A program made the position numbers and the translations under genes. This document shows positions 11,998 through 12,470 of a stretch of DNA of 34,337 nt, one piece after another. The notes beneath the pieces were generated by a model. It did no database searches and was not told where the DNA came from. It saw nothing but the letters and a program-made list of their open reading frames with translations. The stretch covers positions 1-34,337 of the forward strand of contig NW_021832020.1 of assembly GCF_006345805.1 (NCBI RefSeq). The letters run 5' to 3'. The stretch is from Octopus sinensis. Its lineage: Eukaryota. Numbering within the stretch: the first letter of the stretch is position 1; the number at the start of each line of letters is the position of its first letter.

Positions 11998-12470
11998 GTA
12001 CAAAACATAGGAATATACTGAAGTTCAACGTTCGCCCGGATAAAGGTCACACGAAGGTTGTGACGGCACAATTACTGGTAGTAATCAAGAGAAAACTGGG
12101 CAAAAGATCGAAGCAGAAACACAAATCAAGACAGAAGAGGCGAGGTAAACGTATCACAATAAAGGTTCACGAAGTGAACAGCACTTCCGGTGAGGAGAGG
12201 CTTTTGCAAACGCTGAAAAAGCGCGTAAAGAAGACTTACCTACAGAATATTAAACTCCCGGCGGAAGTGTTGCAACGCTATGTCGATATGGACCAATCAA
12301 ACGTTAGAACCGACAAAAATATTCTCCAGTTGAAAGTGACGTGTCAGCGTTGTGGTAAGAAAATCAGGCCCTTTTTGGCCAATCGTTCGAACCGAAAGAA
12401 GCAGCTTCGATCGCTGAAGGATCGTTATCATGTAAAACCGCTAATTGCTCTGGATCACTATACAACATAA
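11998..12470 (+). CDS. Terminal coding exon of an activin/inhibin-beta-like TGF-beta prodomain protein, ending without a mature domain
   Basis: (G)TKHRNILKFNV...VVTAQLLVVIK...KRITIKV...LLQTLKKRVKKT...LQLKVTCQRC...HVKPLIAL parallels INHBA exon 2 as I recall it (GTARKTLHFEI...VVERAEVWLFLK...KVTIRL...LLSEKVV...LDVRIACEQC...SHRPFLML). TAA at 12468-12470. Upstream exon not found in the window. Confidence 0.75.

What the first reader, a model, noticed from the sequence alone, without database searches (positions are those of the whole stretch)
11998..12470. Activin/inhibin-beta-like exon that stops at the end of the prodomain: candidate prodomain-only TGF-beta protein
Seen: a good acceptor, then a stop-free 157-codon frame with prodomain arm motifs in the right order and a CxxC. 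The stop falls 4 residues after the last strand (KPLIALD, equivalent to RPFLMLQ), where the furin site and cystine-knot ligand should begin. Downstream is AT-rich, ATTTA-rich UTR-like DNA with no decayed ligand sequence, and I found no CC/GW/CxGxC exon in the remaining 22 kb. A very basic insert (KRKLGKRSKQKHKSRQKRRGKR) contains two R-X-K-R furin motifs. Known: in INHBA this exon also enters in phase 1 at G|GT and continues into the ligand; free prodomains (myostatin propeptide, TGF-beta1 LAP) inhibit their ligands. Inference: a ligand-less paralogue acting as a secreted, possibly heparan-binding activin/myostatin antagonist or chaperone.
Basis: partly seen in the sequence, partly recalled or inferred. 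Interest (0 to 1): 0.85.

Follow-up and report, generated by a model that had tools for sequence, protein, structure and literature searches.

The report
Ligand-less TGF-beta prodomain gene in octopus
This exon is the last coding exon of an octopus gene that encodes only the "prodomain" half of an activin-like growth-factor precursor. The hormone half is missing, and the same truncated design is kept under selection in cephalopods, snails and bivalves. That points to an undescribed family of free prodomains that may regulate growth factors made by other genes.

Summary
A good acceptor (AG at 11996-11997) opens an exon at 11998. It reads through 156 codons to a TAA at 12468-12470.

A profile of the ORF finds TGF-beta family proteins whose cystine-knot ligand follows the matched region. 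A family profile hits only the pro-activin A prodomain in the PDB (E 3e-6). An AlphaFold model of the full protein matches only TGF-beta-family prodomains among its top 19 PDB hits.

The exon is exon 2 of a two-exon, 275-aa gene that is annotated as "hypothetical" or "uncharacterized" in Octopus vulgaris and O. bimaculoides. Exon 1 carries the signal peptide and alpha-1 helix and lies about 18 kb upstream of the window.

The stop is at the same position in four octopods, and dN/dS is 0.08-0.16. No ligand sequence is detectable in the window or in the orthologous loci of four other species.

All named molluscan relatives (cuttlefish, oysters, scallop, clam, limpet, vent snail) also end 5-13 residues after the PFLVI strand. 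A spliced scallop gill transcript confirms this at RNA level. Ligand-bearing relatives exist, for example in an annelid.

The function (a secreted, polycationic, trans-acting prodomain) is inferred, not shown. Octopus expression is not shown either. No literature on the family was found.

The parts
1..11997 (+). 3' part of intron 1 of the gene. It is repeat-rich and ends in a polypyrimidine tract and the acceptor AG at 11996-11997. Exon 1 (signal peptide, N-terminal Cys pair, alpha-1 helix; aa 1-119) lies outside the window, about 17.9 kb upstream of window position 1 in the O. vulgaris assembly.
   Evidence: The window is colinear at 95-97% identity with O. vulgaris L005 28241-49663. Exon 1 is at L005 10001-10357 with donor ATAG|GTGAGC. 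tblastn of P0025 finds only exon 2 in the window.
11998..12470 (+). Terminal coding exon (exon 2). It encodes the C-terminal half (arm/shoulder domain) of a TGF-beta-family prodomain: a split Gly codon, 156 codons and a TAA stop.
   Evidence: The translation is 100% identical to residues 120-275 of CAI9742215.1.
12087..12152 (+). Polybasic loop KRKLGKRSKQKHKSRQKRRGKR, containing RQKR and RGKR. It lies between two arm strands. Basicity here is shared by the whole family; the exact furin consensus is not.
   Evidence: Alignments A2 and A5, motif count, and low-pLDDT loop in the model.
12342..12353 (+). CQRC: two Cys that are invariant across the family. They align with CEQC of pro-activin A, which forms an intrachain disulfide.
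   Evidence: Invariant columns C115 and C118 and C234 and C237. Aligned to 5hly. The disulfide is described in PMC4932183.
12435..12455 (+). KPLIALD, the octopus version of the family's last conserved motif [RK]PFLVI (activin RPFLMLQ). In ligand-bearing relatives the furin site follows 12-16 residues later.
   Evidence: Alignments; sequences.
12468..12470 (+). TAA stop codon, at the identical position in the window, O. vulgaris, O. bimaculoides and a more distant octopod.
   Evidence: Four-way alignment.
12471..13072 (+). Probable 3' UTR: AT-rich (29% GC), 7 ATTTA motifs, and blocks conserved across four octopods. The poly(A) site is not determined. The first AATAAA/ATTAAA signals are at 13162, 13470, 13690 and 14268.
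13073..13811 (.). 739-bp insertion with terminal inverted repeats of about 316 bp, looking like a foldback or MITE element. It is present in the window and O. vulgaris and absent from O. bimaculoides and the distant octopod. It interrupts the conserved 3' region.

Best explanation
SHOWN. Window 11998-12470 is the second and last coding exon of a two-exon gene. The product is 275 aa and is identical over this exon to O. vulgaris CAI9742215.1. The O. bimaculoides orthologue is XP_014776163.1. The product is a complete TGF-beta-family prodomain and nothing else. It has a signal peptide, an N-terminal Cys pair (CNTTEC), an alpha-1 'straitjacket' helix with the family's I..x..L pattern, and an arm domain with the invariant CxxC. 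It ends 5 residues after the last conserved strand motif. Its closest solved relative is the prodomain of activin A (inhibin beta-A). In ligand-bearing relatives the homologous exon runs on through a furin site into the cystine-knot ligand. In every named mollusc the reading frame stops instead, and what remains is under purifying selection.

INFERRED. The protein enters the secretory pathway, where it is N-glycosylated and disulfide-bonded, and is released as a free, very basic prodomain (58 K+R against 13 D+E). Because the ligand-gripping alpha-1 helix and the arm are conserved although the gene has no ligand of its own, it most likely binds in trans to a mature activin/myostatin-type ligand made by another gene. 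Its polybasic patches would hold that complex on heparan sulfate or other polyanionic matrix. It would then act as a latency or localisation factor, like the myostatin propeptide or LAP supplied in trans.

My confidence that it is a conserved ligand-less prodomain gene is about 0.9. My confidence in the trans-acting ligand-binding mechanism is about 0.45.
For: Homology:
- The A1 profile against 1.84e9 proteins gave P0006 9.8e-7, P0009 3.5e-5, P0014 2.3e-4, P0015 3.2e-4 and P0018 7.8e-4. All matches lie in the region just before a Pfam TGF_beta domain, which scores 1e-17 to 1e-28.
- Family profile A2 against PDB gave only 5hly_A at 3.4e-6 and 5hlz_A at 1.4e-5, in the prodomain region.
- AF2 model: pLDDT 66.5 overall and 75-92 in the arm strands.
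- The Foldseek top 19 are all TGF-beta-family prodomains, at 1e-5 to 1e-2.

Gene model:
- P0025 and P0029 are both 275 aa with two exons and a phase-1 G|GT junction.

Selection:
- Exon 2 dN/dS is 0.082, 0.107 and 0.157 in three pairs. Differences fall 8/4/34 by codon position, with no indels.
- The stop is conserved in 4 taxa.
- In exon 1, residues 41-81 (Cys pair plus alpha-1) show 3 changes, against 21 in the other 77 residues (sequences).

No ligand:
-.

Family:
- Ligand-less relatives are annotated in Acanthosepion pharaonis, Crassostrea virginica, Pinctada imbricata, Argopecten irradians, Mya arenaria, Patella caerulea and Gigantopelta aegis.
- The scallop contig L009 is spliced across the 20-kb intron, carries the stop and has no ligand. 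It comes from a gill metatranscriptome.
- The C. virginica genome has TGA right after ..FKQS.
- A ligand-bearing genomic exon has the same intron phase.

Secretion and charge:
- Hydrophobic core at residues 10-26, 7 sequons, net charge about +45.

Activin precedents:
- The prodomain stays bound non-covalently after cleavage. There is a Lys-rich heparan sulfate site, the CxxC forms an intrachain disulfide, and the N-terminal Cys pair is a likely ECM tether (PMC4932183).
Against: - Pfam TGFb_propeptide does not hit the octopus protein at all. It is only sub-threshold in Sepia (18.6 bits) and Gigantopelta (20 bits) against a cutoff of 25.8.
- No RNA evidence for the octopus gene itself was found. 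The protein clusters hold only annotation-derived or genomic entries.
- The octopus sequence has lost some family-conserved residues: TRWQK is TYLQN and PFLVI is PLIAL.
- AF2 gives low confidence for the last 12 residues and only pTM 0.50 overall.
- Exon 1 as a whole evolves faster, with dN/dS 0.48.
- No binding partner is identified.
- The extreme basicity could instead point to a function unrelated to TGF-beta ligands.
- The activin prodomain itself binds weakly and does not confer latency (PMC4932183), so an inhibitory role is not implied by homology.
- A ligand exon more than 22 kb downstream cannot be formally excluded from this window.
Confidence: 0.6

Rival explanations
1. The gene is a conserved secreted prodomain-only protein, but its job has nothing to do with binding TGF-beta ligands. 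The prodomain fold has been re-used as a polycationic matrix, glycosaminoglycan-binding, antimicrobial-like or other extracellular protein.
For: Net charge is about +45, with 58 K+R against 13 D+E. Polybasic stretches are the most obvious shared feature of the family. The ligand has been lost in at least two sequence clades, the PFLVI group and the RRPIL group, so the prodomain does not need a covalently attached ligand. The activin prodomain binds heparan sulfate (PMC4932183).
Against: The alpha-1 helix, whose known role in the family is to grip the ligand, keeps its invariant I and L. It is the best-conserved part of exon 1. The arm-domain core motifs are conserved beyond what charge alone would need.
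Confidence: 0.25
2. It is an ordinary full-length TGF-beta family gene. The ligand lies on a further exon beyond the window (more than 22 kb downstream) and is reached from an internal donor, for example GGTAAG at about 12355. The in-frame stop would then be used only in an unspliced or alternative isoform.
For: Cephalopod introns are long: intron 1 is 28.8 kb in O. vulgaris. A GT-AAG exists at 12355 in three of four octopods. Octopus transcripts were not examined.
Against: - Codons after 12355 are constrained (dN/dS 0.20) and encode family-conserved motifs (IRP.L, KP.I.L).
- The 12432 donor is lost in the distant octopod.
- The stop position is conserved in four taxa.
- In ligand-bearing relatives the ligand is contiguous with this exon, not on a separate exon.
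- The scallop mRNA and the RefSeq oyster, snail and clam models all end at the equivalent point.
- No ligand was found within 10 kb downstream in O. vulgaris, O. bimaculoides, Argopecten or Crassostrea, nor within 22 kb in the window.
Confidence: 0.05
3. It is a decaying pseudogene remnant of an activin-like gene, and the open frame is fortuitous.
For: There is no Pfam hit, there are divergent residues at some conserved positions, and no octopus transcript was found.
Against: dN/dS is 0.08-0.16 with dS up to 0.38. There are no indels in 468 nt, while the flanks are full of them. The 275-aa length is identical in O. vulgaris and O. bimaculoides. The architecture is conserved across three molluscan classes.
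Confidence: 0.02

Closest known systems
Pro-activin A (inhibin beta-A precursor), prodomain; PDB 5HLY/5HLZ
   Same: It is the only solved protein hit by the family profile, at E 3.4e-6 over chain residues 114-266. It is among the top three fold matches. The motif order is the same: [VI]L.F strand, A.[LV]W.[FL] strand, S/TW.. strand, L.[LV].I.C..C, basic stretch, RPFL strand. Both have an N-terminal Cys pair before alpha-1 and a basic region before the last strand. In activin that region is the heparan sulfate site (PMC4932183). From memory, not tested here: the INHBA intron also splits a Gly codon just before TLHF.
   Different: The octopus gene has no furin site at the end and no cystine-knot ligand. 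It is much more basic, and about 20% identical or less. Pfam TGFb_propeptide does not recognise it.
Free propeptides that act in trans: myostatin/GDF11 propeptide and TGF-beta1 latency-associated peptide (LAP)
   Same: The predicted product is exactly what these are after furin cleavage: a stand-alone prodomain with alpha-1 helix and arm. Fold matches to pro-myostatin (5nxs, 6umx, 5ntu) and L-TGF-beta1 are among the hits.
   Different: Those propeptides are made together with their own ligand from one precursor. Here the gene encodes no ligand, so any partner must come from another gene. There is no RGD and no bowtie CxC for prodomain dimerisation. Inhibitory activity is untested.
Ligand-bearing members of the same lophotrochozoan subfamily (e.g. 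Ridgeia piscesae 'TGF-beta family profile domain-containing protein' P0027; unnamed P0006, P0009, P0014, P0015, P0018)
   Same: They are 24-30% identical over the prodomain half, with all motifs shared. The phase-1 intron lies before the [VI]LQF strand.
   Different: In these proteins the exon continues 12-16 residues past PFLVI to an R-X-[KR]-R site and a Pfam TGF_beta domain.
Uncharacterized molluscan proteins of the same ligand-less family: XP_014776163.1 (O. bimaculoides), CAI9742215.1 (O. vulgaris), CAE1318778.1 (Acanthosepion pharaonis), XP_022310534.2 (Crassostrea virginica), XP_041367488.1 (Gigantopelta aegis), KAK6166469.1 (Patella caerulea), KAK3109045.1 (Pinctada imbricata), Argopecten irradians P0021, Mya arenaria LOC128206521
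   Same: They share the architecture: signal peptide, Cys pair, alpha-1, arm with CxxC, basic stretches, and a stop 5-13 residues after the last strand.
   Different: None has a functional annotation or, as far as my searches went, a publication.

Membership tests
TGF-beta superfamily precursor (canonical architecture) | N-terminal signal peptide | tested here: met
   There is a hydrophobic core at residues 10-26 of the 275-aa product, with Kyte-Doolittle 11-residue means up to 2.25. It is encoded by exon 1, outside the window. No dedicated signal-peptide predictor was available.
TGF-beta superfamily precursor (canonical architecture) | Prodomain with alpha-1 helix plus arm beta-sandwich (homology to known prodomains) | tested here: met
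   Profile against PDB: the pro-activin A prodomain is the only significant hit, at 3.4e-6. The Foldseek top 19 are all family prodomains. The profile hits proteins that carry Pfam TGF_beta downstream of the match.
TGF-beta superfamily precursor (canonical architecture) | Pfam TGFb_propeptide (PF00688) above the gathering score | tested here: not met
   There is no hit at E<=10 for the exon or at E<=0.1 for the full protein. The Sepia and Gigantopelta relatives reach only 18.6 and 20 bits against a cutoff of 25.8.
TGF-beta superfamily precursor (canonical architecture) | Furin site (R-X-[KR]-R) at the prodomain-ligand boundary | tested here: not met
   The frame ends ..KPLIALDHYTT-TAA. The only R-X-K-R motifs are in the internal basic loop at residues 163-170.
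TGF-beta superfamily precursor (canonical architecture) | C-terminal cystine-knot ligand domain (Pfam TGF_beta, PF00019) | tested here: not met
   It is absent from the product. No match was found in six frames of the window or of the O. vulgaris, O. bimaculoides, Argopecten and Crassostrea loci. Positive controls scored 1e-20 to 1e-32.
Activin/inhibin-beta subfamily | Prodomain closer to inhibin beta-A than to other subfamilies | tested here: inconclusive
   Among solved structures only the activin A prodomain is hit by sequence profile. A ligand-bearing relative's best PDB hit is 5hly, with the prodomain included. However, Foldseek ranks the BMP9 prodomain marginally first, and no phylogeny with named invertebrate activins or myoglianins was made.
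Activin/inhibin-beta subfamily | Phase-1 intron just before the first arm strand, with the second exon running into the ligand | tested here: inconclusive
   Phase-1 G|GT is shown for Octopus. A phase-1 acceptor one codon away, with the exon running into the ligand, is shown for relative L012. The human INHBA intron position is from memory and could not be checked with these tools.
Activin/inhibin-beta subfamily | Arm-domain CxxC forming an intrachain disulfide | not testable with these tools
   The two Cys are invariant across the family and align with activin CEQC. The bond itself is known only for activin A (PMC4932183).
Trans-acting latency or propeptide inhibitors (myostatin propeptide, LAP) | Binds a mature ligand and blocks or localises its signalling | not testable with these tools
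   The only evidence is indirect: conservation of the alpha-1 I/L pattern and of the arm.

The most novel reading that the evidence does not exclude
Molluscs, possibly from their common ancestor and possibly more than once, converted an activin-like TGF-beta gene into a dedicated gene for a free prodomain. This soluble, matrix-anchored regulator would capture or chaperone ligands encoded by other TGF-beta family genes. It would be a natural, genetically separate 'latency factor': a new class of extracellular TGF-beta pathway regulator alongside follistatin, noggin and chordin.
Probability: 0.35. Interest if true: 0.8.

Novelty: new variant of a known kind. Interest (0 to 1): 0.66.

Why it matters
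TGF-beta family prodomains are known to fold, chaperone, localise and in some cases silence their own ligand. They are always described as one half of a precursor. A gene that encodes only the prodomain shows that the prodomain can have a selected function of its own. Here that design is kept under purifying selection in cephalopods, gastropods and bivalves, while relatives elsewhere keep the ligand.

It gives an experimentally tractable natural case for asking three questions:
- Can prodomains act in trans across family members?
- How are they anchored in the matrix?
- How do signalling ligand genes give rise to regulators?

There are practical consequences too. The family is invisible to Pfam and is labelled 'uncharacterized' everywhere, so censuses of molluscan TGF-beta signalling miss it. 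Myostatin and activin control of growth is of interest in shellfish aquaculture.

Tried and rejected
- Pfam scan of the exon, and later of the full protein, gave no TGFb_propeptide hit. Only weak chance hits appeared (Cas_Csy3, Ribosomal_S27, zf_UBZ). I rejected these as artefacts of the CxxC and the basic composition.
Pairwise similarity to human activin is therefore not significant by itself.
- The first word-indexed homology search with the single ORF found only one protein, a genomic orthologue. The annotated O. vulgaris protein surfaced only in the profile search.
- I tried to scan whole translated frames with Pfam through DNA references. I replaced it with a local ligand HMM.
- Looking for exon 1 inside the window found nothing. 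It lies upstream of the window.
- An exact look-up of oyster isoform X2 was not on record. Isoform X1 worked.
- I first thought the oyster gene might splice after ..FKQS, because some ORFs read on (..KQSWDL..). The C. virginica genome has TGA there, and the read-through tails differ by frameshifts. This is therefore stop-codon variation, not a donor.
- The profile search with ligand-bearing relatives returned no named relatives that would assign them to a named subfamily.
- Literature searches for prodomain-only TGF-beta proteins, the gene identifiers, and PF00688-only proteins returned nothing relevant.
- The species of the distant octopod runs (SRR11869384 and others) could not be identified.
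- The internal-donor hypothesis was considered and rejected on conservation and codon constraint.
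Full report
**1. The observation**

- A polypyrimidine tract ends in ...tttttgcaacAG at 11996-11997.
- The exon opens at 11998 with GT, the last two bases of a split codon.
- There are 156 sense codons from 12000 to 12467, then TAA at 12468-12470.
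- The same frame is closed about 45 nt upstream of the acceptor. There is no ATG before codon 97, so the frame must be entered by splicing.
- The basic insert KRKLGKRSKQKHKSRQKRRGKR (12087-12152) contains RQKR and RGKR.
- CQRC is at 12342-12353 and KPLIALD at 12435-12455. Four residues follow before the stop.
- The next 700 nt are 29% GC and contain seven ATTTA, against a window-wide mean of 1.24 per 700 nt.

**2. It is a real coding exon**

The first homology search found one protein, P0001, encoded on four short Logan contigs.
- The contigs are genomic. The intron, acceptor and 3' flank align to the window at 82% overall.
- Within the ORF, identity is 90.3% with no indels. The flanks are 67-82% identical with many indels.
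- The 46 differences fall 8/4/34 by codon position.
- Nei-Gojobori dN/dS is 0.107 with dS 0.38. It is 0.20 for the part after the candidate internal donor at 12354 and 0.135 for the last 12 codons.

I later added O. vulgaris and O. bimaculoides.
- Exon-2 dN/dS is 0.08-0.16 in three pairs.
- The TAA is at the same position in all four taxa.
- Conserved blocks continue for about 600 nt downstream.
- The candidate donor CAT|GTAAAA at 12432 is AAT|GTCGAA in the distant octopod.
- The GGTAAG at 12355 encodes the Cys-Gly-Lys of a family-conserved motif, and the codons after it are conserved.

**3. What it is homologous to**

Pfam does not recognise the exon or the full protein. Human INHBA aligns only at E=25. 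Three further lines of evidence override it.

- *Profile search.* A profile of the ORF and its orthologue was searched without a word index against 1.84 billion representatives. It gave 20 hits below 1e-3. Five of them (P0006, P0009, P0014, P0015, P0018) carry a strong Pfam TGF_beta domain (1e-17 to 1e-28) directly after the matched region. The ORF therefore corresponds to the C-terminal half of their prodomains.
- *Family alignment.* The trimmed alignment of 16 sequences (A2) shows the shared motifs in order: [VI]LQF, A.LW.L[VI], a polybasic loop, GK[KR]I.L.V, L..L+T+VKKT+WQKI.LP, LQL+I.C..CG..[VI]RP.L, a second basic stretch, and [RK]PFLVI. Searched against all PDB sequences, this profile hits only pro-activin A (5hly_A at 3.4e-6 and 5hlz_A at 1.4e-5).
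- *Structure.* An AlphaFold2 model of the full 275-aa protein was built from a 12-sequence alignment. It has modest confidence overall (pLDDT 66.5, pTM 0.50), but 75-92 in the arm strands and 84-89 in a long N-terminal helix. Its top 19 Foldseek matches in the PDB are all TGF-beta-family prodomains: BMP9, pro-activin A, BMP10, latent TGF-beta1 and pro-myostatin.

**4. The whole gene**

The profile search of the named database returned CAI9742215.1, 'Hypothetical predicted protein [Octopus vulgaris]'. It is 275 aa and 100% identical over the exon. Its cluster mate is XP_014776163.1, 'uncharacterized protein LOC106873350 [Octopus bimaculoides]'. That protein is also 275 aa and has the same C-terminus.

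| Feature | O. vulgaris (L005) | O. bimaculoides (L010) |
|---|---|---|
| Exon 1 (aa 1-119) | 10001-10357 | 10001-10357 |
| Intron 1 | 28.8 kb | about 11.7 kb |
| Exon 2 | 39191-39663 | 22030-22503 |
| Source | | |

- The exon-1 donor is ATAG|GTGAGC, so the intron is phase 1 and the split codon is G|GT.
- The window is colinear with the O. vulgaris locus at 95-97% identity, with indels. It therefore comes from a very close relative or another haplotype or assembly. The exon differs by one synonymous site.
- Exon 1 lies about 17.9 kb upstream of the window start.
- Exon 1 encodes a hydrophobic signal-like core (residues 10-26), a Cys pair (CNTTEC) and a helix LKQLHRIHMIQQYISSAL. The I and L of that helix are invariant across ligand-less and ligand-bearing relatives.
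- Between the two octopuses, residues 41-81 have 3 substitutions and the other 77 residues of exon 1 have 21 (sequences).
- The mature protein has seven N-X-S/T sequons, and 58 K+R against 13 D+E.

**5. Is the ligand really missing?**

No ligand sequence was found.
- A 12-sequence ligand HMM run on all six frames also found nothing.
- The targets were the 34-kb window, the O. vulgaris and O. bimaculoides genes with 10 kb on each side, the Argopecten and Crassostrea loci, and the scallop transcript.
- Held-out family ligands scored 1e-20 to 1e-32 with the same HMM.

Every named molluscan relative lacks the domain and ends 5-13 residues after the PFLVI motif.
- Acanthosepion (Sepia) pharaonis: ..KPFLILYRQQA.
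- Crassostrea virginica: two RefSeq isoforms ending ..STRYRHSFKQS, followed by TGA in the genome.
- Pinctada imbricata, Argopecten irradians, Mya arenaria, Patella caerulea and Gigantopelta aegis.

There is RNA-level evidence from the scallop.
- Contig L009 joins exon 1 to exon 2 across a 20-kb intron.
- It carries the stop and continues colinearly for 5.2 kb without any ligand.
- It comes from run SRR23580857, an rRNA-depleted metatranscriptome of scallop gill (PMC10989825).

Ligand-bearing members of the same subfamily exist, for example in the annelid Ridgeia piscesae and in several unnamed sources.
- In them the furin site lies 12-16 residues after PFLVI.
- One of them sits on a genomic contig. 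It has a phase-1 acceptor one codon away from the octopus position, and its exon runs straight through SRRKR into the ligand.
- The molluscan genes are therefore truncated versions of that exon, cut roughly where furin would have released the prodomain.
- A second sequence clade (..RRPIL..; Mya arenaria and three Logan proteins) is also ligand-less, yet it is closest to the ligand-bearing P0009 group. The ligand may have been lost more than once.

**6. How it most likely works**

Shown:
- It is a conserved gene, under purifying selection, that encodes a complete TGF-beta-family prodomain without a ligand.

Inferred:
- It is secreted. The evidence is a signal-like N-terminus, the sequons and the conserved Cys pairs.
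- It folds like the activin prodomain. The invariant CxxC would form the intrachain disulfide described for activin A (PMC4932183).
- It acts on ligands encoded elsewhere. The argument is that the element with a known ligand-gripping role in the family, the alpha-1 helix, is the best-conserved part of exon 1 although the gene has no ligand of its own.
- It is held on polyanionic matrix. The protein has an exceptional positive charge. The second basic stretch occupies the position of activin's Lys-rich heparan-sulfate site (PMC4932183).

Open points:
- Whether it inhibits, stabilises or localises a ligand cannot be decided from sequence.
- The activin prodomain itself does not confer latency (PMC4932183), whereas the myostatin and TGF-beta prodomains do.
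- The two R-X-K-R motifs in the first basic loop are conserved within Octopus but not in other molluscs; only basicity is. I regard furin cleavage there as possible but not a family feature.

**7. Rivals**

- *Ligand-independent role for a polycationic secreted protein.* This is the serious alternative (about 0.25).
- *A distant downstream ligand exon.* This is unlikely (about 0.05), given the codon constraint up to the conserved stop, the contiguous exon layout in ligand-bearing relatives, and the consistent ligand-less mRNAs and models in other molluscs.
- *Pseudogene decay.* This is excluded for practical purposes by the dN/dS values and by conservation across three molluscan classes.

**8. 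Comparison and novelty**

- The closest solved relative is the activin A prodomain. The closest functional analogues are the free myostatin propeptide and LAP.
- The protein fails two defining features of a canonical TGF-beta precursor, the boundary furin site and the cystine-knot domain. It also fails the Pfam prodomain threshold. It should therefore be filed as a prodomain-only derivative of the family, not as an activin.
- Assignment to the activin/inhibin-beta branch rests on the PDB profile result and on intron phase. It is provisional, because I built no phylogeny with named invertebrate ligands.
- The proteins already exist in databases, but only as 'hypothetical' or 'uncharacterized' with no domain. 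Six literature searches found nothing about them or about prodomain-only TGF-beta genes.
- I rate it a new variant of a known kind.

**9. Caveats**

- Expression of the octopus gene itself was not shown.
- The species of the window and of the distant octopod are not known.
- The structure model is of moderate confidence.
- The human INHBA intron position is from memory.
- The taxonomic origin of most ligand-bearing relatives is unknown, so 'pan-molluscan loss' is an inference from the nine named mollusc species (all ligand-less) and the single named ligand-bearing relative, an annelid.

Noticed in passing
window 13073-13811: A 739-bp insertion with terminal inverted repeats of about 316 bp (81% complementary). 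It looks like a foldback or MITE element and sits in the conserved 3' region of the gene. It is present in the window and O. vulgaris and absent from O. bimaculoides and the distant octopod (empty site CAGAATT|GTAAAAG). A partial copy lies at 6277-6419. The first AATAAA after the stop (13162) is inside it.
   Followed up: partly
window 14588-15150 and 15364-15927: A tandem duplication with 98.8% identity. It gives two identical 86-aa ORFs on the minus strand (14792-15052 and 15569-15829). The O. vulgaris assembly has a single copy (L005 about 41789-42215).
   Followed up: partly
window 4610-5045, 20161-20663, 31296-31667; single copies e.g. 11650-11870, 17998-18214, 33617-33826: A repeat unit of about 184 bp that occurs in short tandem arrays (2-2.7 copies, 89-94% match) and is also dispersed. 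One copy ends about 130 bp upstream of the exon's acceptor. A second dispersed element of about 420 bp occurs at 1684-2094, 5059-5468, 14385-14807, 28126-28533 and 32965-33352.
   Followed up: partly
window 18671-18924: A 36-bp minisatellite with 7.1 copies at 99% match. It produces repetitive ORFs on both strands (..SLIQSEECRCDI.. repeated).
   Followed up: no
window 5618-5693 (+): ARAGORN calls a tRNA-Asn (GTT) inside intron 1. I did not check whether it is a functional tRNA gene or the head of a tRNA-derived SINE.
   Followed up: no
window 2059-2799 (+) and 10716-11000 (-): ORFs of 246 aa and 94 aa that look by eye like retroelement fragments. Neither has any Pfam hit at E<=0.1.
   Followed up: partly
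related proteins P0046-P0049 (Mya arenaria LOC128206521 and three Logan proteins) versus P0009/P0037: A second ligand-less clade (..NFTDENIIQF.., ..HKRRPIL..) is most similar to a ligand-bearing group whose ligand is itself degenerate (C.N.C instead of C.G.C, and a single Cys instead of CC). This suggests repeated or stepwise loss of the ligand within this subfamily.
   Followed up: partly
L011 (Crassostrea virginica) about 22365-22370, and proteins P0011, P0013, P0017: The oyster stop codon varies. The RefSeq genome has TGA right after ..FKQS. Other oyster-derived ORFs read TGG there and continue into tails that differ from each other by frameshifts. The exact C-terminus is therefore not constrained.
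   Followed up: partly
L009 1-480 (Argopecten transcript contig): The first 480 nt of the scallop transcript contig do not map within 10 kb upstream of exon 1. This is either a distant 5' UTR exon or an assembly chimera. The 5.2-kb colinear tail after the stop may be a long 3' UTR or nascent RNA, because the library was rRNA-depleted total RNA.
   Followed up: no
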